From the IMG/VR virus record IMGVR_UViG_3300028177_000001, positions 62,001 through 126,000 of that record: a stretch of DNA of 64,000 bases; one strand, 5' to 3'. Below the pieces are notes generated by a model. The model ran no database searches and was not told the DNA's origin. It saw nothing but the letters and a program-made list of their open reading frames with translations. The position numbers were made by a program, and so were the translations under genes. Positions 9,932 to 47,220 of the stretch are shown here, one piece after another; within the stretch, counting starts at the first letter, position 1, and the number at the start of each line of letters is the position of its first letter.

Positions 9932-10486
9932 TTAGACCGTCACTTCCACTTCGACCTGGGGGGCTGAGGTGGGGTTGATAACGTCGGTGTCCTTGATCAG
10001 GAACATGCACTGAGGACAGCCCAAGAGCTTGTCGCTGGCCCCGCCACGCCGCTTGTAGATGGCCTTCTTGAGAGGGGGAGCGCCTTCACACCGAGGGCAA
10101 CAGGGACGACCCGAGTCACACTCGGACTTGTCCATCCGGTACTTGCGGTCTCGGGAGGCCCAGTACAACGCCTTGCGAGCGAATGCCTGGGCTACCCGAG
10201 AAGGAACCGGTCCGCCTGGGACGCTGACTGTCTCGGCGCCACCCGCACCCGTGTTGGTGTGGGTGGGGTTCGCCGACCCGTCGTTGTCCATCCTCTGAAG
10301 GTCCTCGACCGGGAAGCGACGGTTGCCCGTCGACATCTCCACATCAACCATGCCGATGGCGGGCCACACTGCTGTGACACGTCCGGCCTGGCTGTCGAAC
10401 ATACCGAACGGAACCACCACTCCCCCTACGGAGAACTCGGCAGCTTTCGCTTGGTAGTCGATGAAGTTGTCTGCTTCCCGCTTCAA
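9932..10486 (-). CDS. Head-associated protein with C-terminal zinc ribbon
   Basis: CPRC...CPQC. Carries the tag variant SRVAQAF. Confidence 0.6.
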   Translation of the reverse strand: MKREADNFIDYQAKAAEFSVGGVVVPFGMFDSQAGRVTAVWPAIGMVDVEMSTGNRRFPVEDLQRMDNDGSANPTHTNTGAGGAETVSVPGGPVPSRVAQAFARKALYWASRDRKYRMDKSECDSGRPCCPRCEGAPPLKKAIYKRRGGASDKLLGCPQCMFLIKDTDVINPTSAPQVEVEVTV

Positions 10487-11682: not shown

Positions 11683-11749
11683 TGAAGTACTCCTGAAGAA
11701 GGAAAAGCTTGAGCGGGGCGGCAGGGCCGACACACTATCGGTGTTGTGT

Positions 11750-11839: not shown

Positions 11840-14800
11840 CTACCCCCAGGGGGCAAAGTCCCAGGTCAAAGCAACCTTCTTTGCAGGGCCCTGCGCGTGC
11901 GCGTCAGCTCCCGCCCTGTCATCGAAGTAGTCCACGTCGCCCGCAGGGTTCTTTGCCCCGTACTTGCCCTCGTCCGTCTTCCAGACCGTGCCCGCTGCAT
12001 GCTCTTCCTCAACCACCTCCTTCTCGGAGGGCTGCGGCGCGGGCTTCTTCTCGGCGGGGGGCGGGGCAGAAGTCGGCTTTGCGGGGGTCTTCTTGGAAGG
12101 AGTCTTCTTGATGTGCTTGCCCAGCGCCTGGAGAAGGGTGTCCACCCAGCTCTTCTGTTCCTTCACGTCCTTCGGGAACTCCTTCTGCTTCTTGCCCACC
12201 TGCGCTCGGGTCTTCTTTGCCTCGGCGTCATGCTCACCCACCTTCGCGCCTGGGCCGACCTTGCGGGTTGTCGCGGGGTCAAGGAAGGCAGTGTCCATCA
12301 CCAAGAAGTCGATCATCATCTCCTTCATCATGGCGTGGTCGTCGGCCGACATGTTCTTGTTCTTTTCTGGGTCCGACAGAAGCTCAGCGATGGGGTACGC
12401 CGGGTGGTCGTCCGAAACCAGACCCAGGAACTGCGATCCTGTGAGGTCATCGTAGACATCGCGGATGAAAGCCTGGTCATCCGAACCGAGGCTCTCGTCG
12501 CCCCCCAGGGTGCCGATGCTCAGGATCTTGCGCAAGTTGCCGCCCGCATCCGCAGCGCCGACGAGCCTCGCCATCGAAGAACCCACCCCCTGGGCATCCT
12601 TTCCGTCTTCCAGGGCCCCTGCTACGACCAGACCCCTCTGGATAGCCTCTATCTCGATGCGTCGAGGGTCACCTTCTTTGAGGTCTTCCATCTCGCGAGC
12701 CAGCTTGTCCAGATGGCGGACACGCCCGTCCTGGTCCATCTGGCGGTACTTGGCCACAGCCGTTTCGGCGCGGGCCACCGCTACATCCTGAGCTTTTCGA
12801 AGATCGCCCTCCGTGAGAGGAGCACCAGATTCGGAGAGAGGGTTGTCCGCGTCGACCATCGGGTTGTCGATCACCTTCTCGTAGTGCTCGACCTTAGCCA
12901 GGAACTCGGCCATCTTCTTCGGATTAGCATGAAGCTTCTCCCCGACATCCCCCGTGTCCTCCAGGTCCTCTTGCGCTTGCTTTGCGTCCTTGATGAACTC
13001 CGCCAGGTCTTCCGGCGCTGCGGCGGCCAGGGCCGTGCGCGCTGCGTCCAGGGTTTCCTTGAAGACGGCGTATTGCTCAGGCTTGAGATCATTAATGGCT
13101 CGGGAGACCGTACTCTCGGAGGTCTCGGAAAGCACGTTCACGACGTTGTCGATCAACTCGGTTTTTGCCTTGCTCTCAGCCTTCTCCCTTTTCACCTTGG
13201 CCTTCGCTTCAGCCTCGGCCTTCGCTTCAGCCTCGGCTTCAGCCTTCGCCGCGCCAGCCTTCTCGGCTTCCTCTTCCAGAAGCTCTACGGCTGCCTCAGC
13301 GTCGCTCTTGTCGGAAAGACCCTCGGTGACACCCTTGATTTCGTCCTCAGCCAGGCCCAGAGCCAGATAGCGGTCCATCAAGGACTTCTGGAAGTCCTCA
13401 AACTTCTTCGGGTCTGGGTCGTCGTCGGAGCCGGGCAGGTTGCTGGGGTCTGGCTTCGGAGGAACCTCCGCCTTGCCCCCGTCGTCCTTCGGAGAATCGC
13501 CTTCCGAAGCGTCTCCCTCCTCGAGAGACTCGTACTCACTGCCTCGGTCACGTAGGGTGTCCTCAGTGACCTCAGTGACCTGCCCTGTGTCCTTCTTCCG
13601 AACCCGAACCTTCTTAGTCTCCTCGGCCAGAAACCTCAAGGCGACCCGACGGGCCGAGGAGTCCTTGTAGTTCTGGGACCGGTCCTTCTTGTCCTGCTTC
13701 TCGTCCGGGTCCTGTTCCTCGTCCGTCTCTTTCACCTTGCGGGTCTGGAGGTCAGTACGAGGCGGCTTCTTGGTAGGGGACTGCTTGATGAGGTCCTCGG
13801 TTGCCTCGTCTTCCTTCTCAAGGCGGGTCTTCGTACTGAACAGAGTCCGCAAGGACTCATTGAACATCGGGTCGTTGATTGAGCCCTGGTCTCGCGAAGC
13901 CCAGCGCAAGGCGACCCGAAATGCAGACGCATGCATCTTCTTGCCCTTGTTCCGATCTTCCTGGACCCAGCGCCAGAACTGACCCACAGGCATAGTGAGG
14001 AACTCACCGTCCTTGAAGAAGCCGGGACGGTCGTACTGCTTCTTGTAGAGACCGATCGCCTCCTCGGGTGAGTCGAACCCGAGCATGACCTTGTCCTCGT
14101 CGAACTTTCCAGTCCCAGGGTCCTGCTGGTGGATGACGACGACCACCGAGGAGTCGTGGTTATCCCCCACGTACACGTCCAGCTTGTCCCCGTCAGTGCC
14201 CTCGGTCCCTCGGATCTCGCCGTAGTGGGCGTGCATCTTGATCGACCACTCGGTCCCGTCGGGTGCCTCGCCAGAGCGGGTGGCACCCTTCTTGTTCTCA
14301 ACGTCGATCTGGATGCCCTGGAAGTCAAGGTAGCCCTCGAACGGGAACTCCTTCCGCTTTGCCTGGGGGGGCTCCACCTTCACCGGGTGGTGGTTGTGGG
14401 GGGCCTCAATGATGTCTTGGTTGCTGGCAGCAGTACGTCGCTGCTCCTGGTAGACATAGTCCAGGTATCCCCCGTCGGGGTTAATCTGACGGAGGGTTCG
14501 CCCCTTCCGGATCTCCCCCAGATACCAGGCCCAGACTTCCGGGAACAGCTTGCTGTACGTGATCTTGATGGGGATATCCCGCCCCAAGATCTTCCCCGCC
14601 ATGGCTCGATGGTGACCGTCGGAGAAAGCCACCGTCCCGTCGCGGTGTACCAGAACCCCCACCGGCTCCGAGAAGTCCACGGTTTTCGCCCACTCGCGAG
14701 CTTCCCGAGATCGGGGGTTGAAGCCCCGCCACCACCCTGCCTGGTACTCCCCCACTCCGCTCTTCAGCTCTGACGCCGGGAACATCAGTCGCTGGCTCGC

Positions 14801-17800
14801 GGTCTTCGACCCCCAGCCGCTCTGGGCGAACCAGGCCTTCTGCTTTGCAGCTCGCTCCTCCATGATAGGCAGGCGAGGGTCTTCAGTGGGGATCGGCTGC
14901 CATTCCTCGTCCTTGGACATCCTCTCGCAGGGGAGCCCTTCGCAGGGAGTGTCGTTCCAGTGCTTCGAGAAACCGCCGAGGTTGACCTCGTAGGGACAAT
15001 CACCACACCTGTCGTAGAACTTGGCGCCGTCGTGCAAGATGCCCATGCAGTGAGGGCAGTGGGAGGTGATGTCGAAGGCTGCGGTCTTCACAGAAGCACC
15101 CCGAACCTTCGGGTGTCCGTACAGTGCCTTCTGGACCATGCCCAGACTTGCGAGCTGACGCTGATAGTAGCCGTCGCCCTCCCACTTGATGTCCTTCCCC
15201 TTGAGGACAGCGCGGACTACCTTCTCGTCCGTGATGCGGGGAGCTCCCGCAGACTCAAACATCCGAGCTACCTTATGGGAAGCCTCTCCGTACCAGCCCC
15301 GTTGCTTGATTAGAGCCATGGTCTGCCGCACCACTGCAGACTTCGCAGCGCGGGTGCCGTCCGTGCCCATCAAGGCCAACTTGTTTCCGAACGGGGTGAC
15401 CTTGTACGCAATAAAAGCGTCCGGAGCCTGGTCGGCATCCAGGTCAATCAGCTTGAGGATCTTGTACTTGCTCAGAAAAGTGGCAAGGTCTGGGATGTGG
15501 GTGCCCAACTGCCCGTACGAGATGGAGTAGAGGTCCCAGACGGTCTCTCCCTCAGCCCGTTCAAGATCTGAGGTGGAAACATCAATCCACTTATTCTTAG
15601 GGAACTGGACCCGAGCATATCGCTCAGCCACTCGGTGGGCGGACACAAACCCCTGCTTGTTCAGCTTCTGGGGGGGCTTCCCCTCCTTCAAGAAAGCCTC
15701 CTCCAGGCCGGGAACCAGGTAGCTGGAGCGCAGCATCGAAGGGGCATGACCTACGGCCTCCGCAGCGCCCTCGAGAGCCTCCTTGAACTCTGCTTTGAGG
15801 ATCTTCTCCCGCTCCTTCTTGTCCGAGGGCAGCGTGCCCCCCTTCGAGCGGACTTGCTTCAGCCGGGCCTTCATTTCCTCGTTGGCGTGCAGGCCCCGGA
15901 GGTCCTTCGCTGTGACGCCGAAGTCCTTCAGGTATGCGTTCACGCCCTCTGCCCCGACCACGCAGTCGTCGCCCTCACAAAGGATTTGGTCGTCCGGCTT
16001 CTTGCCCTTGAGGGCTGCCTTCAAGGCTGAGACCACCTTTGCCGAGGAGATCTTCTTCTCCTGGTCGACCCCGGACTTGCCCGTGTACTTGATGGTGGCG
16101 GTGTTCCCGGAGAAGGAGACGTGCTTCTTGAGCCAGCCCGTGACCCCGAAGTGGCCGTCCTTGGCGGATTCGGAGTTGCCTACCCGCTCGTAGGTCTCGT
16201 CAATAAGCGCCACTGCAAGGGCTGTGAGGCGCTCTCTGGGGTCGTCGGAGGTGAGCTCGCGCTTGTACTGAGATCGGAGATCCGGGAGGGCCTGGCGGAT
16301 CTTCTCGACCCGGTTCGCCTTTTCCTTGTCCTGCTTGTCGTGGTGCTGCTCGGTGTACTCGTACACCACCCGCTCGACACCATCAGGGGTCTTCACCTTC
16401 TTCTTGGACTTGAAAGCTGCGGACGCGTTGATGTCCCTCCAACGACCCCCCTCGCTGCGAAACGAGACGATCTCGGGCTCCTTGAAACCTTTGGGGGCGA
16501 GAGTGGACACATCCCAACCGTGCGCCATAGACCATGCGTGGTCGCGGGCCTCCTGGATGTCATCCGCAAAGAACTCGAAGCTCTCCTCTCGGCCTGTGGA
16601 GTCTCTGATCAGCAATTGGTACTTGTTCGATGGGGCGACCCCACCAGGCAACCGAACCCACCGACGGCGGATTCCCGACCCTTGCGGGGTGAATCCGGAG
16701 CGCTTGTACCATGCAGCCAATTGTGCAGAGGACAGGTTCTTAGAACCCACCGCTGCTGGGATCAGGGAAAGCTCTGTGTCCGTACTATCCGCAAGGCGGA
16801 GGATCTCCTTCAGGACAGTGGAACCCGCTCCCCGACCAGAACAATCACGGGGGTCCTCCAGCTGAATCATGACCAGGTGTGCGCGACCCTGCTTGGGCTG
16901 GATCACGGTATGGACTCTACAATCCTGGAACTCCCAGAAACGGTGTCCAGGCTTCTGGGGGTCTTCGGGCTCCGCCGACAGTGCGCGGTAGCCTGTGAAG
17001 AACCTCGAGAGAGAGGCGACCCTAACAGCGGAAGACTGGATAACAAGCTGCTTGCGGAGCTTGCGCACCTGCTGGCCCAGCTGCTGAGAAGGAGCCTTGT
17101 TCTGATACAGGGTCCAGAGCTGCCGAACAACCCCAGGCAGCGGCCTCAGCTTCTCTGTTAGAGTGCCCGTCTTGTCCAGGCCAACCGCCTCCTCGAGGAA
17201 TGCCTCGGCCGTGAGGAGGTGCTTGCGGATGCAGTCTGGACAGAACTTCGCCGGGTGCGCCAGATGGTCCTCGAGCAGCAGGAGCTGCTTCGCTGCCTCC
17301 CTCAGGTTGAAGAGGGGGTCCATGATGGGCAGCTTCGACGCCGCCTTCTTGAAGGGCTTCGTCTCGAACTTCCCGTCTTCGCTGAGCTCGGTGTATTTGA
17401 ACACCTTCAGTACCACCTTGGGCTTGTATCCCGCAGGGAGGTCCGCCTCATAGCCGAGATACTCGGTGTCTCCGGGCAGGATGTAGAACAACACCTCCTT
17501 CGCTGTGGAGTCAAGCACCATCTGGCTCGAGGTGATCATGTTGTCCGTATTTCGGACCATGTTGTTCGGGTCGGCGCGGTCCTTCTTCCGCTTCCCGTAG
17601 AGAGCAGGCGCGATGTCAGCGGGGGACTTGAGACCCCGGAGCGTCTTCTGCGCCTGGTTCCTACGTGTCACCGAGGAAAGGTAGTCGTCTGAATCGTGGG
17701 TGTACCCCGCATTTTCGTGCGCGAACCCGTGGTTGGTCCGAGTGTGGATTTGATCCCCGCGCACTGTCTTGGTCACGCAATCGTGCTTAGACGTGTGCTC

Positions 17801-18232
17801 GATGCTCAGGGTCTTGTCGGGAGATACCAGGAAGGTATGCCCCTTGACACCGCCCTGGTACTCGCACGCAATAGCCAGAGCCTCATCGAGGCTCTTCTGC
17901 TCCAGGACCTTTAGGATCCGAGCTCCGTCCTTCGACTTCTTGCCCACTTCCTTGACGAGACGCTTCTCGGCCTCGTCGCGGGCCACCTGCAAGGCGGAGT
18001 TGACAACGCCGATGCCGAACTCGTTCAGGCCTTCGACCCAGCCCGTCCCCTCATCCTTGAGATACAGAACCTCAACGCCCTCGCGGATCTCGTGGTAGAT
18101 CTTTACCTTGGGGGCGTAGTTCCGGTCGCGGTTCTTCAGCAAACACCGATGGCCTCCCCATTGCCCCGCAGCAATGATGCAGGCAGTTCTGCCCTGCATC
18201 ATCGCCACCACCCTCGCGGGGGAGGGCTTCAC
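11840..18232 (-). CDS. 2130-aa polyvalent protein: Ntn-hydrolase, GNAT, topoisomerase IB, ParB-like, inorganic pyrophosphatase-like and acidic C-terminal domains
   Basis: Ntn: C-IIAAG..KNRDR..EGLNEFG..RTNH. GNAT: GRGAGS..WYKRSGF. Topo IB: RVGN/GKSG/KDLR/GH/SY pentad. ParB/Srx: DGHHR. PPase: YGEIRGTEGTDGDKLDVYVG..FDEDKVMLG. Confidence 0.85.
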   Translation of the reverse strand: MKPSPARVVAMMQGRTACIIAAGQWGGHRCLLKNRDRNYAPKVKIYHEIREGVEVLYLKDEGTGWVEGLNEFGIGVVNSALQVARDEAEKRLVKEVGKKSKDGARILKVLEQKSLDEALAIACEYQGGVKGHTFLVSPDKTLSIEHTSKHDCVTKTVRGDQIHTRTNHGFAHENAGYTHDSDDYLSSVTRRNQAQKTLRGLKSPADIAPALYGKRKKDRADPNNMVRNTDNMITSSQMVLDSTAKEVLFYILPGDTEYLGYEADLPAGYKPKVVLKVFKYTELSEDGKFETKPFKKAASKLPIMDPLFNLREAAKQLLLLEDHLAHPAKFCPDCIRKHLLTAEAFLEEAVGLDKTGTLTEKLRPLPGVVRQLWTLYQNKAPSQQLGQQVRKLRKQLVIQSSAVRVASLSRFFTGYRALSAEPEDPQKPGHRFWEFQDCRVHTVIQPKQGRAHLVMIQLEDPRDCSGRGAGSTVLKEILRLADSTDTELSLIPAAVGSKNLSSAQLAAWYKRSGFTPQGSGIRRRWVRLPGGVAPSNKYQLLIRDSTGREESFEFFADDIQEARDHAWSMAHGWDVSTLAPKGFKEPEIVSFRSEGGRWRDINASAAFKSKKKVKTPDGVERVVYEYTEQHHDKQDKEKANRVEKIRQALPDLRSQYKRELTSDDPRERLTALAVALIDETYERVGNSESAKDGHFGVTGWLKKHVSFSGNTATIKYTGKSGVDQEKKISSAKVVSALKAALKGKKPDDQILCEGDDCVVGAEGVNAYLKDFGVTAKDLRGLHANEEMKARLKQVRSKGGTLPSDKKEREKILKAEFKEALEGAAEAVGHAPSMLRSSYLVPGLEEAFLKEGKPPQKLNKQGFVSAHRVAERYARVQFPKNKWIDVSTSDLERAEGETVWDLYSISYGQLGTHIPDLATFLSKYKILKLIDLDADQAPDAFIAYKVTPFGNKLALMGTDGTRAAKSAVVRQTMALIKQRGWYGEASHKVARMFESAGAPRITDEKVVRAVLKGKDIKWEGDGYYQRQLASLGMVQKALYGHPKVRGASVKTAAFDITSHCPHCMGILHDGAKFYDRCGDCPYEVNLGGFSKHWNDTPCEGLPCERMSKDEEWQPIPTEDPRLPIMEERAAKQKAWFAQSGWGSKTASQRLMFPASELKSGVGEYQAGWWRGFNPRSREAREWAKTVDFSEPVGVLVHRDGTVAFSDGHHRAMAGKILGRDIPIKITYSKLFPEVWAWYLGEIRKGRTLRQINPDGGYLDYVYQEQRRTAASNQDIIEAPHNHHPVKVEPPQAKRKEFPFEGYLDFQGIQIDVENKKGATRSGEAPDGTEWSIKMHAHYGEIRGTEGTDGDKLDVYVGDNHDSSVVVVIHQQDPGTGKFDEDKVMLGFDSPEEAIGLYKKQYDRPGFFKDGEFLTMPVGQFWRWVQEDRNKGKKMHASAFRVALRWASRDQGSINDPMFNESLRTLFSTKTRLEKEDEATEDLIKQSPTKKPPRTDLQTRKVKETDEEQDPDEKQDKKDRSQNYKDSSARRVALRFLAEETKKVRVRKKDTGQVTEVTEDTLRDRGSEYESLEEGDASEGDSPKDDGGKAEVPPKPDPSNLPGSDDDPDPKKFEDFQKSLMDRYLALGLAEDEIKGVTEGLSDKSDAEAAVELLEEEAEKAGAAKAEAEAEAKAEAEAKAKVKREKAESKAKTELIDNVVNVLSETSESTVSRAINDLKPEQYAVFKETLDAARTALAAAAPEDLAEFIKDAKQAQEDLEDTGDVGEKLHANPKKMAEFLAKVEHYEKVIDNPMVDADNPLSESGAPLTEGDLRKAQDVAVARAETAVAKYRQMDQDGRVRHLDKLAREMEDLKEGDPRRIEIEAIQRGLVVAGALEDGKDAQGVGSSMARLVGAADAGGNLRKILSIGTLGGDESLGSDDQAFIRDVYDDLTGSQFLGLVSDDHPAYPIAELLSDPEKNKNMSADDHAMMKEMMIDFLVMDTAFLDPATTRKVGPGAKVGEHDAEAKKTRAQVGKKQKEFPKDVKEQKSWVDTLLQALGKHIKKTPSKKTPAKPTSAPPPAEKKPAPQPSEKEVVEEEHAAGTVWKTDEGKYGAKNPAGDVDYFDDRAGADAHAQGPAKKVALTWDFAPWG

Positions 18233-20988
18233 GGTTGGCCTCGCCTGCGGCGAACTTCAACCACACTGCCGCGCATCTCAAGCAGGCGGGCCACCCGCTG
18301 CACGCTGGCTTCGGGCAGGGGTTCCCTAAGAGACACCCTCTCGCCGAAGGGGATCACGTGCTTCTTGGGAAGCCCCCAGACCTCCATCTCGCCGAACTGC
18401 CAGCTGCCGGTCGGAGCCACCAGCTTCATGTCGGAGTGAGGGTCGTCCAGATACGCAATCGTGGAGTGAGGGTTGTACCGAGGGAACTTGTCGGCGACAT
18501 CGAAGCCCGCTCCCTCAAGCTTTGCCCAGACCTGGTCGCGAACCGCGCTCAGATCCTTCGAAAACCGGACGGTGCTGAACACCACCTTGCCTGTGGGAGT
18601 CACAAACCTGTCCAGTTCCCCCAGGGAGGCTTGCACCGGGGCGTCCAGGTCTACCAGAGCCGTCTCCAGAACCTGAAGAAACTCGTCCTGCCTCGCCTTC
18701 GGAACAGCCCCCACGTACAGGAAAGTGACATGCTGGGGCGAGGTGTCCTCTTCCTTTCTGGGGAACTGGGCGGAGATCTCCTTCGGAACAGGGATGAAGA
18801 GCCCAACACCGCTGCCGTCTCCGGTCTCCGCTGCCATGCGGACTTCTCTGGGGATCGCCGAGTTCTGGGAAGGAAGGTGGAAGTCCTCAGGCGAGCAGAT
18901 CAGCTCGTGCGCAGGCTGGTGGATGGGGAACGTCTGGATCTTGAGAGGACGGCCCAGCGCCTTGGATGTAGCCTTCAGGTCAGACTCGTACGTGGTGATG
19001 TTCTCGTTCTCCCAGATGTCAATCTCACTCACCGTGTTGAGACCGGCCAGAAGGTTGCGCAACACCACGACCTTGAACCGAGCCGCTGACATACCGGGGT
19101 TGAAGTACATCGCGTCAAACCGGAGTCCCTTCTGTCCCAGGAGCTCCTTCACCCGCTTGCTGTGCCTGCGGATGCGCCCCGTGACCACGACGGTGTAGGT
19201 GCTTGCCTCGCGGATCGCTTTCTTGGCTTCCTGCACGGGGGTGGGGATCCAGTAGTTCGACGAGGGCCGATCGGGCACACAAGGCTCGCCAAGGGACTCC
19301 TCCCGCACAAAGAAGGAGAAGGGACCGTCGTCCAGCTCCGAACCCTTCCACCAGGTCGGTGTCTTCTCCCAGGAACGGAACAGCGTTCCGTCAAAGTCGA
19401 ACATCGCGATCTTGGTGTAGCTGCGAGCGATCTTGACTGAGCCCTGGCGGGGCACACCCAGAACCGCCTCGGCGATCGTCGCGCCCCACTTCTGCTTCAG
19501 GCCGTCAGAGTTCATTTCCAGTTCCCTTGAGATCATTTGCTTCAGGCGCGAGGCCTGCTGCGCCAGGTCGGGGTTGTCCAGCAAGAGCTTCTGGCCGATC
19601 TGCCTCACTTGAGCCCCGAGTCTGCCCATGTCCCGAAGCTCGAGGTCGTACTTCCGAGCCAGGTCGGGAACGAAACTCTTGTCCTTGTATGCGTTGCCTG
19701 GGTTCTTGAGCATACCCAGGAACTCCCAGGCGTCATCCCGCTCCATCCCCAGGGTGATCTCGCGAACCCGAACCTGCTCGCTTGAGGGCAAGAACTGGAT
19801 GCTGGCACCCAGAGGAAGACCCACGTCCAGAAGCCCGAACACGAGATCCATGCGCTGGTCGCGAACGTAGTTCTCAAGAGTGGAGCGGAAGCCCTTGTCC
19901 TTTAGGATCAGTTCCCGTACCGGCTCCAGCAGTCCCAGGTCCTCCATCATGGCCAGCGCCTTCTTCCAGGTGCTCTCGGTGAGAACGATCTGGGTGAGAA
20001 GCTGGGCGAGGTGAGACGAGGGGATGTTTTTGAGCTTCGGCGCGTTCTGCTTGATGGCAGCGCGAGTGTCCGGGGTGAGCTTGTGTCCGTACCGGAGGGC
20101 GAACTTGATCACCCGGATCATTCGACTGGGGTCATCCGAGAAGGTCTTGCCTGGGTCCGCCGGGCACTGCATCCGACCCTCGGCCAGGTCCCGGAGTCCG
20201 CACCCCGTCAGATCGAGGATGTCCTTCTTGTCTGGGCCGTTCGCCAGGGCCATCAAGCGGATCAGCAGGGTGTTGTAGGTAAGCTCTCGCCGGTAGACAT
20301 CGTCCTGGATTGTTGACGGCGCCACGCCCGTGGGCTTGTACCCGCCCTCCTCGTAGGACTCGGTCCGGGCGTTTGCAATCTCGATTTCCTCGCCCTCCAT
20401 GTCAAGCCCGTTGAGATCCCAGGGCTCAAGCACCTTCAGAAGAACGACGCCCCACTGGTTGGTCTTCTTGTTCATCCGCGCAGGCACCGCACGAATCAGC
20501 TTGTCCGCGAACCATTCCGAATCATGCCCCAGGTTGACCGCGTCAACGACCGCGTCCACATCCTTGATAGGCCGGTCCAGAACGAAGTCCCGTACAGCAC
20601 CTCCGACCACGTAGACGTGCTTGCCCGCCTTGGGTCCGAGCGTCCGAGCGAACCCCGACAGGAACTTCATCAGCGCGACGGACTTCTTGTGAGCAAGAGA
20701 GGCATGCAGGAACTTCGCGGCCACCCGGCTGTCCGGCTGCGACGCCTGCTTAGGCTCCTCACCGTACTTCTTGCCCACGACCCCGCTCTTCGCCTTCCGC
20801 TCCTTAACGATCTCGCGATCACCCTCCGCCTTCTGCCAGGGTCCGTAGTGCTTACCGCAGAACCACGCACGTCCTCGGCCGTCCGCCCAGATGCACTCGT
20901 GCTCCGGGGAGCTCTTACACCCCTCGTGCATGCACTGGCTGAACGGCGCGTGCCCTCGGGCAACGCGGCTGGCCGAGGGCTGGATCAA
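18229..20988 (-). CDS. tRNA nucleotidyltransferase (CCA/polyA class II) + HAD phosphatase + 2H phosphoesterase fusion
   Basis: NTase: VVGGAVRD..DVD, ARTESY, DDVYRRELTYN, DDPSRMIR. HAD: FDFDGTLF..VVTGR. 2H: HVTF and HSTI. Confidence 0.85.
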   Translation of the reverse strand: MIQPSASRVARGHAPFSQCMHEGCKSSPEHECIWADGRGRAWFCGKHYGPWQKAEGDREIVKERKAKSGVVGKKYGEEPKQASQPDSRVAAKFLHASLAHKKSVALMKFLSGFARTLGPKAGKHVYVVGGAVRDFVLDRPIKDVDAVVDAVNLGHDSEWFADKLIRAVPARMNKKTNQWGVVLLKVLEPWDLNGLDMEGEEIEIANARTESYEEGGYKPTGVAPSTIQDDVYRRELTYNTLLIRLMALANGPDKKDILDLTGCGLRDLAEGRMQCPADPGKTFSDDPSRMIRVIKFALRYGHKLTPDTRAAIKQNAPKLKNIPSSHLAQLLTQIVLTESTWKKALAMMEDLGLLEPVRELILKDKGFRSTLENYVRDQRMDLVFGLLDVGLPLGASIQFLPSSEQVRVREITLGMERDDAWEFLGMLKNPGNAYKDKSFVPDLARKYDLELRDMGRLGAQVRQIGQKLLLDNPDLAQQASRLKQMISRELEMNSDGLKQKWGATIAEAVLGVPRQGSVKIARSYTKIAMFDFDGTLFRSWEKTPTWWKGSELDDGPFSFFVREESLGEPCVPDRPSSNYWIPTPVQEAKKAIREASTYTVVVTGRIRRHSKRVKELLGQKGLRFDAMYFNPGMSAARFKVVVLRNLLAGLNTVSEIDIWENENITTYESDLKATSKALGRPLKIQTFPIHQPAHELICSPEDFHLPSQNSAIPREVRMAAETGDGSGVGLFIPVPKEISAQFPRKEEDTSPQHVTFLYVGAVPKARQDEFLQVLETALVDLDAPVQASLGELDRFVTPTGKVVFSTVRFSKDLSAVRDQVWAKLEGAGFDVADKFPRYNPHSTIAYLDDPHSDMKLVAPTGSWQFGEMEVWGLPKKHVIPFGERVSLREPLPEASVQRVARLLEMRGSVVEVRRRRGQP

Positions 20989-23312
20989 AAGTCCCAGCCC
21001 CCGAAGATAACCTCAGCCACCTTCTCGTGTTCTGGGAAGTCTGGGGAGACTCCTTCCAGGTTGGAGTTGCGCAGGCCGAACTCGGCGGCGTCGTATGCGG
21101 GAGCGAACATCGACTGAGTCTGCTCACCGTCGCTCATGTTCGCGACTCGGACGTTCGCAGTCTTGAGCTGCTGCAGCTCCGGCCCCGTGGTGTCTTCCAG
21201 GATTGCCTTGTTGTAGGTCCCACACTTGCGGGTGCCGTTCTCCAGAGTGCGCACCATGTTGCACCCCGCGCAACGATCCATTGCTGCCACGGCGGGGAGA
21301 GCGTTGGCCCGGTGCTTCAGGGCTCCCTTCTCGCAACCGGCCATTCCGGTGGGCGACGCATAGGCGGAAGCTTCCACGTACAAGAAGCCCGCGCCGCCCT
21401 CGTGGGCCTGCCTCAGTTCCTGCAGACCGTCCGCCATAGCTGTCTGAACGCGGTCAGAGAACCGCTGGCCGATGAGCTCGTCGAGCCTGGCGCCTGCGTA
21501 GCCCTCGGACATGGCCTGGCGGACGTACCGCAGCCCCGCCCGAACATTGCGGAGACTGTCAGGGGAAGCCTTCTTGGCAACTGCCCTCTGGAACTGCGTG
21601 CCCTCGTAGGTACGGTTGTCGTCGAGCTCCTCCAGAGCTCCGGTCTTGGTCAGAAGCGGATCCAGGTACTTCGATGCAGACGGAACCATGTCCGCCGGGA
21701 TCAAGCGACGAATCTCCTCTGCCAGACGCTTGCCTCGCAGCCCGGACTTGATCACCCGAGCCACCTTGCGAACGGCGACCTTCACCCGCTCTTCAGCGCG
21801 CTCGGCTGCAACCCGCTGAAGGTTCTGGTCGTGGCGGGCCACCCGAGCCTGCCGACCTTCCCGACGCTGACGCCGAGCAGAGATATCCCCAGCCTGTCCC
21901 TGGTTGGGAGCCCCGCTAAAGCCAGCAGTGCGCAGCCACTCTGATGCCTGCTCCAGAGCCCGGTTGACCTCCGACTCGCGACGTGCCTCCCGCGCCGCCA
22001 GGGCCGCGTCCTTCTGAGCCCCTCGCTGGTCGACCTCGGCCTGGCTGCTCGCAGCGCGAGAGCGAGTTGCCTGAAGGCGAGCATCCAGAAGGGCCTGGCT
22101 TCCAGCCTGACCCTGATTCACGGCTCCGGAGAAGTCCCTCGACTGGGCGAGCTTGATGAGACGCACCCCGGCCTGAACCTTACGCTCAGGACTGGCCTCA
22201 GCTGCCAGGATACGGTTGCACGCCTCCTGCGAGAAGAACCCGTCGCGGGCCCAGCGCTTGATTTGAGCATGCGCCGACGCGGTCTTGCGAGCCAGGTGCT
22301 GGACCTGGGGGTCCTCAATCTGCAACTTCTTGTCGGCCAGGAAGCCTTCCCGGACAGCTTCAGAGTGCTGGGGCAGCCACGTCTGGGATGAGTTCTTCGA
22401 CGGAATCTCAAGGAAGGCTCGCTGGAGCCTGTCCCGATCCGAGCCTTCCCAGGTCGGGACCAGTGCTGCGATCCGAGCTTCAAAGCGCGGGAAGTAGAAG
22501 TCGGCCGCTTCCTTCCAGGGGATCTGGGTGACCGCGTGCTTGCCTGTGTACCCGCACCGACCGTTCTGGATCCAGGTAGCCTGCTCCATCTCGCTGGCGG
22601 ACACGAGAACGTACCGAGCCCGAGAAGCATGCTTCTTGACAGCCGTGGACCACTTGCCCGTGCCGTACCCAGGATAGGCAGAGGCGCGGATGTAGACGTT
22701 GCCTGCCAGGCCGTGCTCGGCGCGCACCCTCCGAATGAAGGGGGCGATACGCCCCATCTCTTCACCCATGCTCTCAAGGGCCTGCTTGCACACGACCTCG
22801 ATGTCCTGACCCTCGGCCGACCGACGCATGGCGTGAGCTACCACAGCCCGCATCTGCCTTGTTGTCGCCTTCTTGGTCTGCGGAGCATCCGCAGTGAGGG
22901 ACTCCTCGTATCGGGCCTGGTTGAGATCGCGGGACACGTGTCCGCGTCCGTCCGTGCGTCGGTTCACACCCCAGGCTTCCACCAGCTCTGGGATTATGGT
23001 GTCGTTGGTGCTGTGGGGAAGCCGCTCAGGATCCTGGGAAACTGTAGGGTTCAACCAGTTCAGGTCCGCCAGTTCTTCACCCTGGAGCATCTCCGTGAGG
23101 TCCATGTCCTCCGCCGCCCCCCTGGTCAACCCGGTGGGCAACGCAGGCGACGGGAGAAGCTCAGGATCGAACACGGCTTCAAGCACGCCCATCCCGTACT
23201 CCATGTCGGGATACTCACCAACCCCGAAGCCGGACCCCAGGGTGGACGTCAAGAGGTCCGAAGGAAACTCCGAGTTGCCCAGCTGGTCGATGGTCGAGGT
23301 CTTGTCACTCAT
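20985..23312 (-). CDS. Large putative head protein with Cys clusters
   Basis: 775-aa ORF translationally coupled within the operon, with an internal FSGA.NQGQAG duplication and KKA/KTA linkers. Confidence 0.6.
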   Translation of the reverse strand: MSDKTSTIDQLGNSEFPSDLLTSTLGSGFGVGEYPDMEYGMGVLEAVFDPELLPSPALPTGLTRGAAEDMDLTEMLQGEELADLNWLNPTVSQDPERLPHSTNDTIIPELVEAWGVNRRTDGRGHVSRDLNQARYEESLTADAPQTKKATTRQMRAVVAHAMRRSAEGQDIEVVCKQALESMGEEMGRIAPFIRRVRAEHGLAGNVYIRASAYPGYGTGKWSTAVKKHASRARYVLVSASEMEQATWIQNGRCGYTGKHAVTQIPWKEAADFYFPRFEARIAALVPTWEGSDRDRLQRAFLEIPSKNSSQTWLPQHSEAVREGFLADKKLQIEDPQVQHLARKTASAHAQIKRWARDGFFSQEACNRILAAEASPERKVQAGVRLIKLAQSRDFSGAVNQGQAGSQALLDARLQATRSRAASSQAEVDQRGAQKDAALAAREARRESEVNRALEQASEWLRTAGFSGAPNQGQAGDISARRQRREGRQARVARHDQNLQRVAAERAEERVKVAVRKVARVIKSGLRGKRLAEEIRRLIPADMVPSASKYLDPLLTKTGALEELDDNRTYEGTQFQRAVAKKASPDSLRNVRAGLRYVRQAMSEGYAGARLDELIGQRFSDRVQTAMADGLQELRQAHEGGAGFLYVEASAYASPTGMAGCEKGALKHRANALPAVAAMDRCAGCNMVRTLENGTRKCGTYNKAILEDTTGPELQQLKTANVRVANMSDGEQTQSMFAPAYDAAEFGLRNSNLEGVSPDFPEHEKVAEVIFGGWDF

Positions 23313-24249
23313 GGTTCTTCTCCAGATAGCGGGAGGCTACTCGCTCGGAACTGACAGAAGCCAGCCGATAGCGAGACAGGCCCACATCTGCCTTAGTTGT
23401 AGTCCGGTGCAAGTCCCAGGCCAGGCTCGCCAGCTCGTCCGCTTCCTGCACCAGGGTGTCGAAGAAGCGGGGGCTGTCCTCGAAACTGAAGTCCTGCTCG
23501 GCTTCTTCAGCGTTGATCTTCATGGACCGCACTCGCCCCTGAAGGTTCTGTACTCGGTGCGAGAGGTTGTTCAACGCAGTCTGGGCATCCAGAAGGGATC
23601 GCTGGAGAGGCCGGTGCTTGACGCGGGCTGTCTTTCCCTGTGGGGAATCCTCGTCCAACTCGTCTTCCTGGTCTTCCGCCCAGCCCTCGGGGTCTTCCTT
23701 GATGGCCTCGGCGTCCTCCACGATCTCCTTGACCTCTTCCCTGTCGCGGGAGTCCAGGGTGTCCTCGGCCGGATCCCAGTGAGGCGCATTGAGCTCGTCG
23801 TGAACGGTGTCTCCGATCGCCGACAGGGCCTCGATGCTGTTCATCAACTGGCGTCTCATGTCCGTGATCTTCTGAATGTACCCCTTCCCGCCGAGGTTGC
23901 CGTCCGGGCTCACGTTCCTGCTCTTGATCTTGACGAACCGGGCGTGCGCCGAGGTTGCGTGGCCCAGGGCCATCAAGGTGGAGCGAAGGACCTGCGCAAG
24001 AGGCTTCAGGTGCCGAGCATTGAACAAGAAGTTGTCGTGGATCTCGCGCTCCGAAGGTCCCGGAGTGTTCCAGGCCCACTCGCCTTTGTCGCCGCCCCGG
24101 TCCTTGATGAACCGGACTTCGCCAGCGGTCTTCACCTGGCCTGCATGCTTCTGCCGGGCGAAGCGAACGGCGACACGCTGAGGGTTCGGGGTAGACATGG
24201 GGCAGAGCTCCTCTGGTGTAGACGCACCCATAGGGTCTCTACCGCTCAT
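23305..24249 (-). CDS. Putative head protein with tags at both ends (start may be 24198)
   Basis: RVAVRF near the N-terminus and RVASRY at the C-terminus. Confidence 0.6.
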   Translation of the reverse strand: MSGRDPMGASTPEELCPMSTPNPQRVAVRFARQKHAGQVKTAGEVRFIKDRGGDKGEWAWNTPGPSEREIHDNFLFNARHLKPLAQVLRSTLMALGHATSAHARFVKIKSRNVSPDGNLGGKGYIQKITDMRRQLMNSIEALSAIGDTVHDELNAPHWDPAEDTLDSRDREEVKEIVEDAEAIKEDPEGWAEDQEDELDEDSPQGKTARVKHRPLQRSLLDAQTALNNLSHRVQNLQGRVRSMKINAEEAEQDFSFEDSPRFFDTLVQEADELASLAWDLHRTTTKADVGLSRYRLASVSSERVASRYLEKNHE

Positions 24250-27817: not shown

Positions 27818-29527
27818 CTACCCGAACCTGCCGTCGCCTTCTTCCACCTTGGGGGCGTAGTCCAAGCCGAGTGCCTCGGCAATCTTCTCGTTTGCGTTGG
27901 TAGCTTCGGCCAGAGCGCGGCCAGCTTCGCCGTAGATGCCTCGCAGGACCTCGTTGAAGGTCGGGTCGCTGACCGTGAACAGGTCCCTCTCGATCTTCTC
28001 CCGAACCGCGACCGGGTCAAGGTTGAGGAGCTCAAGGATTGTGTCCACGTCCAGGGATCCCTTCGTGTACAGGTTGTACAGAGCGTCGAAGGTGTCGCGG
28101 TTGTCCCGCAGGGCCAGGCGGGTGAACGTGAGTGTGGGGACCACGACCACGTCTTCGCCGTCAGCGTCTGTTTCTACGAAGCCCATTCGGGAGCACATCG
28201 GCTTGAAGATGTGTTCTTCGACGAAGTCCTGTAGCTGCTCTCGGAGGAGCATGTACCGGGTGTTGATGACCTCCAGGTTGATTCGGTCACCCGAGTATGC
28301 GCTCTCCCCGGAGAGGAGCCCCTCGGTCACACCCAGCCCTGCGTAGAGCTGGCGGTCCGTCAGGTCGTACTCGCTGCTCAGATCCAGAAGTCTCTGGTCC
28401 GCTCCCATCTCTTCCCAGGTGACCTGGAAGTTGGCAATGATGGAGTAGTCCGGATCCATCAGAGCCTGGTCGACCTGCTCCCGCAACGCCTCCACGTCCG
28501 CGACACTAATGTCCTCGCCGTACACGATCCGAATCGGGGTCATGTGGCGGGAAGCGATACTCGTCTGTGCCTGGCGCAGCTTGTCCCTGTACACCAGGGC
28601 GCGCATGCACCGTTCCAGGATGGAGCGGCCCCGAGGTTCGTAGTCGGACTTCCGGTTCGCCATGTAGTGGACGAACGACCCCGCCATGGGGTCTGTGTTG
28701 AGGGGGATGTTCCCCCCGGCCATCACAGCAGCCACCACATCCGCTGGCATCGACTTGACGACCCGCTGGGCCTGCTCATCCCCCTGTCTGGCCTGGTCGA
28801 TGACGCGCTTGGTCTTGGAGTCCGGGATCAGCTCGACAATCTTCTCATCGGTGAAGTTGAAGCTCTCCATCCGGATCTGTTCAGGGGGAAGACACCGGAT
28901 GGATGTCCAGCCCTTGTAGTTCTTCTTCAGCCACTTGGCAGCCTTCTCGTCCGCGTCTTCGACCTCAACCTGCTCCTCAATAGCGAGCCCGTCCTCGGTG
29001 AGGGTGCGGCGTGTCTCGTACCTGACTTCATCCGGCATCTCCGGATTGTCGTCCTCGCACCAGATGAATGCCTCACCGATGAGGTTCCTCTCGTGAACGA
29101 TGGAGATGAGTCTCTGGAGGAGGCCGACCTTGCGTGCCCACTTGGTGCAGAACTTTGCAGCCGCCTCGGCCAGATCTCGATTTGCCGCCTTGGGTGTTCC
29201 GATGCGGACCTTGCTAAGGGGCAGTTCCGTGTGGAGGTCGATCGCCTGACCGACGAAGGGCTCGCTCCGATAGAAGAACCTGTAGTAGTTCCACTGTTCG
29301 TGAAGACTCTGGGGGAGCTCGAGGAAGTCGGTTGAGAGCTCGGGGCTGTAGAAGTTGCCGCCCGCGCCCTGCATGGTGCCCGCGCCGCCCAGACCTCCTG
29401 CCGTGGCGATGCGAGAACGCATCGAACCTGTGACCACACGACGCGGCTTCCCCGTCTTGGCCTTCTGTTTGCCGTCTCCGTTCTTGAACGTGGCTACAGA
29501 AGTCCCGCCGGCATCCTGTTCACTCAT
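27818..29527 (-). CDS. Portal protein
   Basis: 569 aa, downstream of terminase. YRFFYRSEPFVGQAIDLH, PRGRSIL..LR.AQ and LYAGLGV pattern. Confidence 0.8.
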   Translation of the reverse strand: MSEQDAGGTSVATFKNGDGKQKAKTGKPRRVVTGSMRSRIATAGGLGGAGTMQGAGGNFYSPELSTDFLELPQSLHEQWNYYRFFYRSEPFVGQAIDLHTELPLSKVRIGTPKAANRDLAEAAAKFCTKWARKVGLLQRLISIVHERNLIGEAFIWCEDDNPEMPDEVRYETRRTLTEDGLAIEEQVEVEDADEKAAKWLKKNYKGWTSIRCLPPEQIRMESFNFTDEKIVELIPDSKTKRVIDQARQGDEQAQRVVKSMPADVVAAVMAGGNIPLNTDPMAGSFVHYMANRKSDYEPRGRSILERCMRALVYRDKLRQAQTSIASRHMTPIRIVYGEDISVADVEALREQVDQALMDPDYSIIANFQVTWEEMGADQRLLDLSSEYDLTDRQLYAGLGVTEGLLSGESAYSGDRINLEVINTRYMLLREQLQDFVEEHIFKPMCSRMGFVETDADGEDVVVVPTLTFTRLALRDNRDTFDALYNLYTKGSLDVDTILELLNLDPVAVREKIERDLFTVSDPTFNEVLRGIYGEAGRALAEATNANEKIAEALGLDYAPKVEEGDGRFG

Positions 29528-41856: not shown

Positions 41857-41932
41857 AGGGTTCCTCCGTAGAAGAACCCTACCCCGGTCGAACCGCCTTA
41901 GCTACCCGGCTGTAGGCTTTTGTAAGCCGGGG

Positions 41933-47122: not shown

Positions 47123-47220
47123 GAGAGATCCTGTTCTTGCCTGAGCAAGGGGCTCAGTGAGGTACAAGCGCCGAAGATTTGACCACCGGGCACACCGGGG
47201 AATACTCTTGGGCTGGATCT

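What the first reader, a model, noticed from the sequence alone, without database searches (positions are those of the whole stretch)
18229..20988. Single-chain tRNA 3'-end repair machine (CCA-type NTase + HAD + 2H) encoded among head genes
Seen: a class II nucleotidyltransferase, a DxDGT HAD phosphatase and a two-HxT 2H phosphoesterase in one ORF, with tag copies near both ends. The templating motif reads DDVYRRE instead of the usual EDxxRRD. Known: anticodon and CCA-end nucleases leave 2',3'-cyclic phosphates, 2H enzymes open them, HAD enzymes remove phosphates, and CCA enzymes rebuild 3' ends. Some phage 2H proteins (Acb1) instead degrade CBASS cyclic nucleotides. Inference: a virion-delivered counter-defence against tRNA-targeting toxins, active before phage gene expression.
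Basis: partly seen in the sequence, partly recalled or inferred. Interest (0 to 1): 0.7.

Follow-up and report, generated by a model that had tools for sequence, protein, structure and literature searches.

The report
Phage head-block tRNA-end repair enzyme
An uncultured huge phage encodes, inside its head-assembly gene block, one 919-residue protein that strings together three intact RNA-end enzymes able in principle to clean and rebuild cut tRNA 3' ends. It may be carried in the virion, but that is not shown.

Summary
ORF 18229-20988(-) encodes 919 aa with three intact catalytic modules. They are a full-length class II (CCA-type) nucleotidyltransferase, a HAD_SAK_1 phosphatase (DFDGT) and a LigT-like 2H phosphoesterase (HVT, HST). 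Disordered linkers separate them.

For each module the nearest solved structures are RNA-end enzymes: T. maritima CCA-adding enzyme (Z 22), T4 Pnkp 3'-phosphatase (Z 13) and bacterial RNA 2',3'-cyclic phosphodiesterases (Z 13-16). Acb1 is not a significant match.

The gene overlaps both neighbours (TTGA, GTGA) inside a portal-to-capsid block, and three related metagenomic phages keep this order. The nucleotidyltransferase core defines a phage clade of 212 clusters. Many members are 2000-3400 aa chains with shuffled partners. In one relative, RNA ligase, nucleotidyltransferase, HAD, 2H and topoisomerase IB sit in a single chain. This is the "polyvalent protein" pattern.

The "tag" is real: S-[SAP]-x-R-V-A-x-[RK]-[FYW], 15 observed against 0.45 expected. 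It recurs in relatives at termini and linkers, and its function is unknown.

A rival cannot be excluded. The phage has 43 tRNA genes, 17 without encoded CCA, and this is its only such enzyme. Virion delivery is inferred, not shown. I rate it a new variant of a known kind.

The parts
18229..20988 (-). Whole gene, 919 aa. The TTG start overlaps the upstream stop (TTGA), and the stop overlaps the downstream GTG start (GTGA).
20950..20976 (-). Degenerate tag copy 1, residues 5-13 (SASRVARGH). It aligns with canonical RVAxxW[LA] tags at the N-termini of homologs and lies in a disordered stretch (pLDDT below 50).
20752..20934 (-). Small Cys/His-rich domain, residues 19-79 (C19, C24, C32, C44, H47), probably metal-binding. 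It is conserved in many homologs. No Pfam family matches, DUF5661 included.
20707..20736 (-). Canonical tag copy 2, residues 85-94 (PDSRVAAKFL). It starts the N-terminal helix of the nucleotidyltransferase, and its position is conserved in homologs.
19489..20703 (-). Class II (CCA-type) nucleotidyltransferase, residues 96-500, with head, neck, body and tail. Catalytic D143 and D145. Motif D is D229-D230-V-Y-R233-R234-E235.
18865..19428 (-). HAD_SAK_1 phosphatase, residues 521-708. Key residues are D531, D533, T535, T603, K639 and E660-N661-E662.
18331..18840 (-). 2H phosphoesterase of the LigT/ThpR type, residues 717-886, with H753-V-T755 and H841-S-T843.
18274..18312 (-). Degenerate tag copy 3, residues 893-905 (EASVQRVARLLEM), in a low-confidence C-terminal helix.
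11840..18232 (-). Downstream gene, 2130 aa, with overlapping start. It is a polyvalent protein with a weak C45-like N-terminal hydrolase match (34.7 bits, cut-off 85), topoisomerase IB (631-833), InPase (1300-1424) and three strict tag matches plus two looser copies. In relative P0136 its equivalent is fused to the nucleotidyltransferase-HAD-2H string.
20985..23312 (-). Upstream gene, 775 aa, with overlapping stop. Function unknown. A gene of 776-803 aa stands directly upstream of the fusion gene in two of three relatives (L002, L003).
23305..24249 (-). 314-aa protein with canonical tags at both ends (QRVAVRF, ERVASRY).
9932..10486 (-). 184-aa tagged protein with a C-terminal Cys cluster, just upstream of the protease. 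It is conserved and tagged in relatives.
27818..29527 (-). Portal protein.
8425..9930 (-). Head maturation protease.
5490..6362 (-). Major capsid protein candidate.

Best explanation
The gene encodes a modular RNA 3'-end repair enzyme. Inferred mechanism: the LigT-like 2H domain opens a 2',3'-cyclic phosphate left by a metal-independent RNase. The Pnkp-like HAD domain removes the resulting 2' or 3' phosphate. The class II nucleotidyltransferase then adds back the missing C, C or A on a tRNA acceptor end. It is one module of a clade-specific set of polyvalent proteins encoded between portal and protease. That set is most likely made late, loaded into the capsid and released into the next host. 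The enzyme could then restore tRNAs cut by host or rival tRNases before phage genes are expressed. The same enzyme probably also adds CCA to the phage's own 17 tRNAs that lack an encoded CCA. Shown here: the domains, the motifs, the folds, the gene order and the domain shuffling. Inferred: substrate, nucleotide specificity, order of steps, packaging, and any role of the tag in loading.
For: Domains and motifs are intact. The AlphaFold2 model has mean pLDDT 87.9, with folded modules joined by disordered linkers at 80-85, 503-520, 709-716 and 884-896. Residues 96-495 align with T. maritima CCA-adding enzyme residues 12-424 (Z 22.4). Residues 523-692 align with the T4 Pnkp 3'-phosphatase (Z 13.2) and with Pnkp1 of the Pnkp1/Rnl/Hen1 repair complex (Z 13.2). 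Residues 724-886 align with D. radiodurans CPDase (Z 15.6) and E. coli LigT (Z 13.3). The 2H profile hits LigT-type proteins at 4e-5. Of the 120 homolog clusters listed, 43 pair the nucleotidyltransferase with HAD_SAK_1 and 49 pair it with a 2H domain. Two carry an RNA ligase domain. P0136 (67% identical core) has RNA ligase, nucleotidyltransferase, HAD, 2H and topoisomerase IB in one 2792-aa chain. In L002 the 2H domain sits in the next gene. Gene order from portal through the fusion gene and the polyvalent gene to protease and capsid is kept in L001 to L003. Both gene junctions overlap by four bases, and a terminator-like hairpin follows the 2130-aa gene. InPase and 2H domains are listed as parts of phage polyvalent proteins predicted to be packaged and injected (PMC5512222). 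InPase relatives are annotated as minor head, structural or portal proteins in cultured phages. In relative P0012 an intein interrupts the clade's motif D exactly (RRELTYN|C...HN|T), which suggests the site is under strong constraint. tRNA 3' tails are a known immune target (Cas12a3, PMC12851939).
Against: There is no biochemical or proteomic evidence, and no cultured relative carries this clade of enzyme. No NCBIfam equivalog cut-off is reached: CCA_actino scores 92 bits against 439 needed, PcnB scores 80, and the A-adding model scores 64. CCA, A-only, CC-only or poly(A) activity therefore cannot be told apart. HAD motif IV reads E-N-E where many relatives have E-D or D-D. Fusion partners in this clade also include topoisomerase IB, superoxide dismutase, PAP2, GNAT and C39 peptidase. 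Fusion alone is thus weak evidence for a shared pathway. The phage's own CCA-less tRNAs give an ordinary reason to carry the enzyme. The complex test of the tag against scaffold and capsid proteins gave no answer.
Confidence: 0.5

Rival explanations
1. It is an ordinary cytoplasmic tRNA maturation and maintenance enzyme. It adds CCA to the phage's CCA-less tRNAs and repairs normal end turnover. It is not packaged, and its place among head genes is incidental.
For: The phage has 43 tRNA genes, and 17 lack an encoded CCA. This is the only PF01743 match in the 288-kb record. CCA-adding enzymes are common in jumbo phages that carry many tRNAs. The E. coli CCA enzyme also carries its own end-healing domain, an HD domain, for routine repair (PMC6961547).
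Against: The position between portal and protease is conserved, with four-base overlaps to a polyvalent neighbour. The core recurs inside 2000-3400 aa polyvalent chains. Tags are shared with other head-block proteins. CCA enzymes of the cultured relatives Tunturi_5 and phage G lie far from the head genes and are only 29-32% identical.
Confidence: 0.25
2. It is an offensive or signal-quenching effector. The 2H and HAD domains destroy cyclic or 2'-5'-linked nucleotide immune signals, in the manner of Acb1. The nucleotidyltransferase tails host RNAs, for instance with poly(A), to mark them for decay.
For: Iyer et al. proposed that 2H domains of polyvalent proteins act as RNases or degrade nucleotide signals, because they saw no link to RNA ligases (PMC5512222). 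The PcnB model scores nearly as well as the CCA models. Partners such as InPase and PRTase point to nucleotide chemistry.
Against: Acb1 is not a significant match (E 0.39) and does not appear among the top structural matches. In this clade the 2H domain does co-occur with RNA ligase (P0041, P0136). The HAD domain is closest to polynucleotide 3'-phosphatases. The body and tail regions align along the full length of tRNA-binding CCA enzymes.
Confidence: 0.15
3. It is mainly a structural or scaffolding head protein whose enzyme domains are relics.
For: It sits in the head block. Its tags are shared with non-enzymatic neighbours.
Against: Every catalytic motif is intact and nearly invariant across 62 aligned homologs. 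Inteins target the active-site motif.
Confidence: 0.03

Closest known systems
E. coli multifunctional CCA-adding enzyme (Cca, class II nucleotidyltransferase with an HD domain)
   Same: A single chain joins a class II CCA-type nucleotidyltransferase to a domain that removes 2',3'-cyclic phosphate from the tRNA 3' end (PMC6961547 citing Yakunin 2004). It has the same head and neck motifs.
   Different: Healing here is done by two unrelated modules, a LigT-like 2H domain and a Pnkp-like HAD domain, instead of an HD domain. The NF008137 model scores 43.7 bits against a cut-off of 451. This protein is encoded by a phage, in a head-gene block, and carries tags and an N-terminal Cys-rich domain.
T4 Pnkp with Rnl1, and the bacterial Pnkp1/Rnl/Hen1 RNA repair systems
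   Same: The logic is to heal the end and then restore it, as a counter to tRNA-cutting defences. The HAD domain is structurally closest to the phosphatase domains of these enzymes (Z 13.2).
   Different: This protein has no kinase and no ligase, and no PF09414 ligase was found in the record. The restoring step is nucleotide addition at the 3' end, not ligation. Relatives P0041 and P0136 do add a ligase.
Polyvalent proteins of phages (Iyer et al. 2017, PMC5512222)
   Same: Several unrelated enzyme domains sit in one chain and are shuffled freely among relatives. The genes lie next to portal and head genes. The 2H and InPase domains are shared parts.
   Different: A text search of that paper for 'CCA' gave no hit, and its three 'HAD' hits are the ordinary English word, so CCA-type nucleotidyltransferase and HAD_SAK_1 appear not to be among its listed parts. 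That paper argued its 2H domains are never linked to RNA ligases, whereas here they are. No metallopeptidase processing domain was seen here. The clade-specific tag motif is not described there.
Stand-alone RNA-repair parts of jumbo phages (Iyer et al. 2021, PMC7824862)
   Same: CCA-adding enzyme, the 'Swiss-army-knife' HAD phosphatase and 2H phosphoesterases are all listed there as jumbo-phage RNA-repair components.
   Different: In that survey the SAK-type HAD 'tends to occur as a standalone domain'. Here it is fused to the nucleotidyltransferase and the 2H domain and placed in the head block.
Acb1 (phage 2H anti-CBASS nuclease)
   Same: It belongs to the 2H superfamily and is phage-encoded.
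   Different: The profile match is not significant (E 0.39, against 4e-5 for LigT-type proteins), and it is absent from the top structural matches.

Membership tests
Class II nucleotidyltransferase (PolyA_pol, PF01743; CCA-adding / poly(A) polymerase superfamily) | Motif A (GGxVRD) and the DxD catalytic carboxylates | tested here: met
   G129-G130-A-V-R133-D and D143-V-D145. These are nearly invariant in 62 homologs. Pfam scores 63.2 bits against a cut-off of 23.
Class II nucleotidyltransferase (PolyA_pol, PF01743; CCA-adding / poly(A) polymerase superfamily) | Motif D (EDxxRRD), the amino-acid template for the incoming nucleotide | tested here: met
   D229-D230-V-Y-R233-R234-E235. D230, R233, R234 and E235 are 90% or more conserved in the clade. 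It aligns to KKDLYRRD of the T. maritima enzyme.
Class II nucleotidyltransferase (PolyA_pol, PF01743; CCA-adding / poly(A) polymerase superfamily) | Full head-neck-body-tail architecture of the tRNA-binding enzymes | tested here: met
   Model residues 96-495 align to residues 12-424 of 3h38 (Z 22.4). Foldseek gives E 4e-14 over about 430 columns.
Characterised CCA-adding, A-adding or PcnB orthologous groups (NCBIfam equivalogs) | Score above the curated equivalog cut-off | tested here: not met
   TIGR02692 scores 92.4 against 438.8. TIGR01942 scores 79.7 against 305.65. NF041569 scores 64 against 1440. It is a separate clade of 212 clusters at E<=1e-30.
Characterised CCA-adding, A-adding or PcnB orthologous groups (NCBIfam equivalogs) | Template-independent addition of exactly C-C-A to tRNA | not testable with these tools
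   This needs an enzyme assay.
HAD phosphatase, HAD_SAK_1 (PF10307) | Pfam gathering score, plus motifs I (DxDxT), II (T/S) and III (K) | tested here: met
   Pfam scores 42.5 bits against 25.6. D531, D533, T535, T603 and K639 are invariant in 18 sequences.
HAD phosphatase, HAD_SAK_1 (PF10307) | Motif IV acidic pair | tested here: inconclusive
   The motif reads E660-N661-E662. More distant relatives have E-D or D-D at the same place.
2H phosphoesterase, LigT/ThpR-like | Two HxT/S motifs on the 2H fold | tested here: met
   H753-V-T755 and H841-S-T843 are invariant. PF13563 scores 39.7 against 27. Z is 15.6 to 5h7e and 13.3 to LigT. The TIGR02258 equivalog cut-off is not reached (25.9 against 65.7).
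Acb1 anti-CBASS 2H nucleases | Significant sequence or structure similarity to Acb1 | tested here: not met
   The profile gives E 0.39 against 9q2g. Acb1 is not among the 50 best structural matches.
Phage polyvalent proteins (Iyer et al. 2017) | Two or more unrelated effector domains in one chain, shuffled among relatives | tested here: met
Phage polyvalent proteins (Iyer et al. 2017) | Encoded beside portal and head-morphogenesis genes | tested here: met
Phage polyvalent proteins (Iyer et al. 2017) | Packaged in the virion and delivered with the DNA | not testable with these tools
   There is no cultured relative and no proteome. It is only a prediction in the source paper as well.
E. coli-type multifunctional CCA enzyme | C-terminal HD phosphohydrolase domain | tested here: not met
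   No HD domain appears in the Pfam scan. NF008137 scores 43.7 against 451.
'Swiss Army Knife' RNA repair proteins (Burroughs and Aravind 2016) | The domain set as defined in that paper | not tested
   The paper is not held. Only the Pfam family name and a one-line mention in PMC7824862 could be used.

The most novel reading that the evidence does not exclude
A clade of uncultured huge phages pre-loads its capsids with a set of enzymes, including a complete tRNA-end repair kit. It does so with a short conserved helical peptide, S-[SAP]-x-R-V-A-x-[RK]-[FYW], placed at protein termini and between modules. This would be a cargo-loading tag system in tailed phages comparable to encapsulin targeting peptides. 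The repair enzymes would then act in the new host before any phage gene is read.
Probability: 0.3. Interest if true: 0.8.

Novelty: new variant of a known kind. Interest (0 to 1): 0.6.

Why it matters
tRNA cutting is now recognised as a common bacterial immune strategy, and it includes nucleases that trim the 3' tail. Known phage answers are spare tRNAs and the T4 Pnkp/Rnl1 ligation pathway, both made after infection starts. A 3'-end repair enzyme carried in the virion would act before phage gene expression, which would be a new timing for counter-defence. The clade is large, with 212 clusters at 50% identity, and it offers natural fusions of RNA ligase, nucleotidyltransferase, phosphatase and cyclic phosphodiesterase for enzymology. 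The conserved tag gives a concrete, testable handle on how huge phages choose capsid cargo.

Tried and rejected
1. DUF5661: I first took the N-terminal Cys-rich domain for DUF5661, because homologs P0003 and P0004 carry that family. The HMM does not match residues 1-100, nor the genome. It is an unnamed domain.

2. Complex prediction of a canonical tag peptide (C-terminus of the 314-aa protein) with the scaffold-like 412-aa protein and the capsid protein gave no answer, with score 0.00 and controls not run. This is no evidence either way.

3. A HAD profile search against PDB sequences found nothing significant. Only structure comparison placed the domain.

4. Cultured relatives were no help for proteomics. 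The phage G and Tunturi_5 portal regions have no tags and no homologous cargo block. LR745208.1 (portal 67% identical) has a compact head block without the nucleotidyltransferase.

5. The Burroughs and Aravind 2016 paper that defines the SAK proteins is not held.

6. The sigma-70 promoter scan found nothing in the block. The terminator scan was barely above chance (17 found against 12.1 expected). Only the hairpin right after the 2130-aa gene is noted.

7. Tag as a protease site or as a docking helix: not resolved. The motif looks like an N-capped amphipathic helix, and it starts a predicted helix in the model, which leans towards docking. Its position at linkers would suit cleavage equally well.

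8. Sequence signatures said to separate poly(A) polymerases from CCA enzymes were recalled from memory only. They were not clearly present in either form, so they are not used as evidence.
Full report
**What is there**

The window is part of a 288,255-bp IMG/VR virus record that CheckV estimates to be 79% complete. An identical protein also lies on a 350-kb contig. GC content is about 62%.

ORF 18229-20988 on the minus strand gives 919 aa from a TTG start. The TTG overlaps the TGA of the upstream 775-aa gene. The gene's own TGA overlaps the GTG start of the downstream 2130-aa gene. The three genes are therefore packed in the way usual for translational coupling. A terminator-like hairpin sits directly after the 2130-aa gene, although the scan as a whole was near chance.

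**Domains**

Pfam finds four matches, all above their gathering scores:
- PolyA_pol head (125-273)
- PolyA_pol_RNAbd (303-357)
- HAD_SAK_1 (545-663)
- 2_5_RNA_ligase2 (750-852)

PHROGs calls the first part a tRNA nucleotidyltransferase (1.5e-31).

An AlphaFold2 model built on 62 homologs has mean pLDDT 87.9. It shows folded modules on a string:

| Residues | Feature |
|---|---|
| 1-12 | disordered |
| 13-79 | small Cys/His-rich domain |
| 80-85 | linker |
| 87-500 | nucleotidyltransferase |
| 503-520 | linker |
| 521-708 | HAD |
| 709-716 | linker |
| 717-883 | 2H |
| 884-896 | linker |
| 895-915 | low-confidence C-terminal helix |

Catalytic residues are all present:
- Nucleotidyltransferase: G129-G130, R133, D143 and D145, and motif D D229-D230-V-Y-R233-R234-E235.
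- HAD: D531, D533, T535, T603 and K639.
- 2H: H753-V-T755 and H841-S-T843.

These are invariant or nearly so in the alignments. The one soft spot is HAD motif IV, which reads E660-N661-E662 where remoter relatives have E-D or D-D.

RRE in place of RRD is the rule in this clade. D230 and R233, which I take from my own knowledge of class II enzymes to be the templating residues, are kept. Only E229D is private to this protein.

**Structural neighbours**

| Model residues | Best solved matches | Z |
|---|---|---|
| 96-495 | T. maritima CCA-adding enzyme, residues 12-424 | 22.4 |
| 523-692 | T4 Pnkp 3'-phosphatase domain; Pnkp1 of the Pnkp1/Rnl/Hen1 repair complex | 13.2 each |
| 724-886 | D. radiodurans RNA 2',3'-cyclic phosphodiesterase | 15.6 |
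| 724-886 | B. subtilis YjcG, T. thermophilus TT0787, E. coli LigT | 13-14.5 |

Other full-length class II tRNA enzymes follow closely for the first module.

A profile of the 2H domain hits LigT-type proteins at 4e-5 and Acb1 only at 0.39. All three modules thus point to RNA-end chemistry.

No NCBIfam equivalog cut-off is reached. CCA, A-only, CC-only and poly(A) activities therefore cannot be separated by sequence.

**The family**

The nucleotidyltransferase core (87-520) finds 212 clusters at E<=1e-30 in a library of 1.84 billion representatives. That compares with 2521 at 1e-10 and 16065 at 1e-3. It is a distinct clade.

Members come almost only from metagenomes, often on contigs of 100-530 kb.

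Many are 2000-3400 aa long, with the core at the start, the middle or the end.

Counts among the 120 clusters listed:

| Feature | Clusters |
|---|---|
| HAD_SAK_1 | 43 |
| A 2H family | 49 |
| Nucleotidyltransferase, HAD and 2H together (this protein's own cluster included) | 4 |
| Inteins | 9 |

Scattered partners are RNA ligase, InPase, topoisomerase IB, superoxide dismutase, C39 peptidase, zeta/AAA_33 kinase, C45 hydrolase, PRTase and PF18760.

The HAD clade shuffles in the same way, with 2H, topoisomerase IB, SOD, PAP2 and GNAT as partners.

P0136 has a core 67% identical to this one. It carries RNA ligase, nucleotidyltransferase, HAD_SAK_1, 2H and topoisomerase IB in one 2792-aa chain. 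That is the 919-aa and 2130-aa genes of this window fused, with a ligase added in front.

This is the pattern described for phage polyvalent proteins, which are predicted to be packaged and injected (PMC5512222). A text search of that paper for 'CCA' gave no hit, and its three 'HAD' hits are the ordinary English word. So CCA-type nucleotidyltransferase and HAD_SAK_1 appear not to be among its listed parts. It also argued that its 2H domains never accompany RNA ligases, whereas here they do.

**Context**

All genes below lie on the minus strand with short gaps or overlaps. The order is:
- portal (27818-29527)
- 519, 410, 197, 314 and 775 aa proteins of unknown function
- this gene
- the 2130-aa polyvalent protein, with a weak C45-like hydrolase match, topoisomerase IB and InPase
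- a 412-aa acidic coiled-coil protein
- a 184-aa protein
- the protease (8425-9930)
- 372 and 224 aa proteins
- the capsid protein (5490-6362)

Three related metagenomic phages keep the order from the fusion gene through a polyvalent gene, the ~180-aa protein and the protease-sized gene, and the portal-sized and capsid genes appear where the loci reach them (L001-L003). In L002 and L003 a 776-803 aa gene stands directly upstream of the fusion gene. In L002 the 2H domain sits in the next gene, fused to SOD.

InPase relatives in cultured phages are annotated as minor head, structural or portal proteins.

Cultured distant relatives (phage G, Tunturi_5) have their CCA enzymes elsewhere and lack this block.

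**The tag**

The recurring peptide is S-[SAP]-x-R-V-A-x-[RK]-[FYW]. Statistics for the predicted proteome are:

| Pattern | Observed | Shuffle mean (maximum) |
|---|---|---|
| RVA.[RK][FWY] | 15 | 0.45 (3) |
| [ST][SAP].RVA..[FWY] | 13 | 0.1 |
| Cores with permuted order | 0-1 | n/a |

By my reading, about 17 proteins carry a copy that fits the full consensus. The looser pattern R[VI]A..[FWY] gives 26 matches in 22 predicted proteins, and some of those, such as the capsid protein's, are probably chance or structural. The carriers include the 2130-aa protein (three strict matches plus two looser copies), the 314-aa protein (both ends), the 184-aa protein, and a second HAD_SAK_1 protein elsewhere in the genome.

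The loose pattern R[VIL]A..[FWY] occurs in 55 of the 121 stored homologs, this protein included, and most of these copies read as the full tag, at termini and at domain boundaries. The tag also occurs in the same head-block proteins of L001-L003 and of LR745208.1.

This protein has one canonical copy (85-94) that starts the N-terminal helix of the nucleotidyltransferase. It has two degenerate copies (5-13 and 893-905). Relatives carry a further copy in the linker after the HAD domain, which this protein has lost.

The motif reads like an N-capped amphipathic helix, which leans towards a docking peptide. Its position at linkers would equally suit a processing site. A complex prediction with scaffold and capsid proteins gave no answer.

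**Alternative reading**

ARAGORN finds 43 tRNA genes in the record, and 17 lack an encoded CCA. This gene is the only PF01743 match.

No PF09414 RNA ligase was found. Only a short RtcB-like fragment turned up.

Maturing the phage's own tRNAs is therefore an ordinary job that this enzyme very likely does, whatever else it does.

**Mechanism proposed**

The steps below are inferred. The 2H domain opens a 2',3'-cyclic phosphate. The HAD domain removes the remaining phosphate. The nucleotidyltransferase then restores the missing C, C or A.

E. coli Cca does the same in one chain with an HD domain (PMC6961547), so the concept is known. What is new is the set of parts, the clade, the place in the head block and the tag.

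Immune nucleases that trim tRNA tails exist (Cas12a3, PMC12851939).

Packaging is an inference from gene order, overlapping genes and the polyvalent pattern.

**Verdict**

The finding is a new variant of a known kind, and I score its interest at 0.6.

Noticed in passing
genome-wide; in the window e.g. 23305-24249(-), 9932-10486(-), 11840-18232(-), 37099-38232(-): A conserved short peptide, S-[SAP]-x-R-V-A-x-[RK]-[FYW], marks termini and interdomain linkers of about 17 proteins. It recurs in homologs from many other metagenomic phages. Counts are 15 observed against 0.45 expected. Its function is unknown; a docking helix or a processing site are the candidates.
   Followed up: partly
window 11840-18232(-): A 2130-aa polyvalent protein has a weak C45-like N-terminal hydrolase match (34.7 bits against a cut-off of 85), a eukaryotic-type topoisomerase IB core (631-833) and a polyvalent-type inorganic pyrophosphatase (1300-1424). 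Tags separate the modules, and an acidic coiled-coil tail ends the chain.
   Followed up: partly
window 7295-8413(-) and 10495-11733(-): Two acidic, scaffold-like proteins each carry two copies of a second motif, VEEEE..EE(S)SKKA. It was found nowhere else in the genome. It could be the prohead-protease site or a partner for the basic tag. This was not tested.
   Followed up: no
P0012 (homolog), residues about 150-617; also 8 other homolog clusters: Inteins (LAGLIDADG type) interrupt the nucleotidyltransferase exactly inside motif D (RRELTYN|C...VVHN|TLL). This is a sign that the site is highly constrained.
   Followed up: partly
G000:C1:214412-272484 (outside the window): A cluster of about 42 tRNA genes covers most amino acids, and 17 of the 43 predicted tRNAs lack an encoded CCA. 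One odd tRNA-like call with a two-base anticodon lies at 20066-20142.
   Followed up: partly
G000:C1:36152-37162(-) (outside the window): A second HAD_SAK_1 protein (336 aa, 2.9e-20) is followed by a region with two HxT motifs (HITL, HLTL) and a C-terminal canonical tag (SSRRVAARY). Its three downstream neighbours are tagged too.
   Followed up: partly
G000:C1:239009-239140(-) (outside the window): A 198-aa ORF matches only the first 46 positions of RtcB (5.6e-8). It may be a fragment or a small related domain.
   Followed up: no
window 41807-47182(+) / 41933-47167(-): Both strands are open for about 5.2 kb (1791 and 1744 aa) in a stretch with raised GC content and reversed GC skew. Only the minus-strand product has a weak Pfam hint (DUF2460).
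   Followed up: no
window 20752-20934(-); homologs P0004, P0015, P0021, P0025 and others: An unnamed Cys/His-rich mini-domain (CMxxGC...ECIWADGRGRAWFCxxH...GVVGxKYGE) precedes the nucleotidyltransferase in many clade members. No Pfam family matches it.
   Followed up: partly
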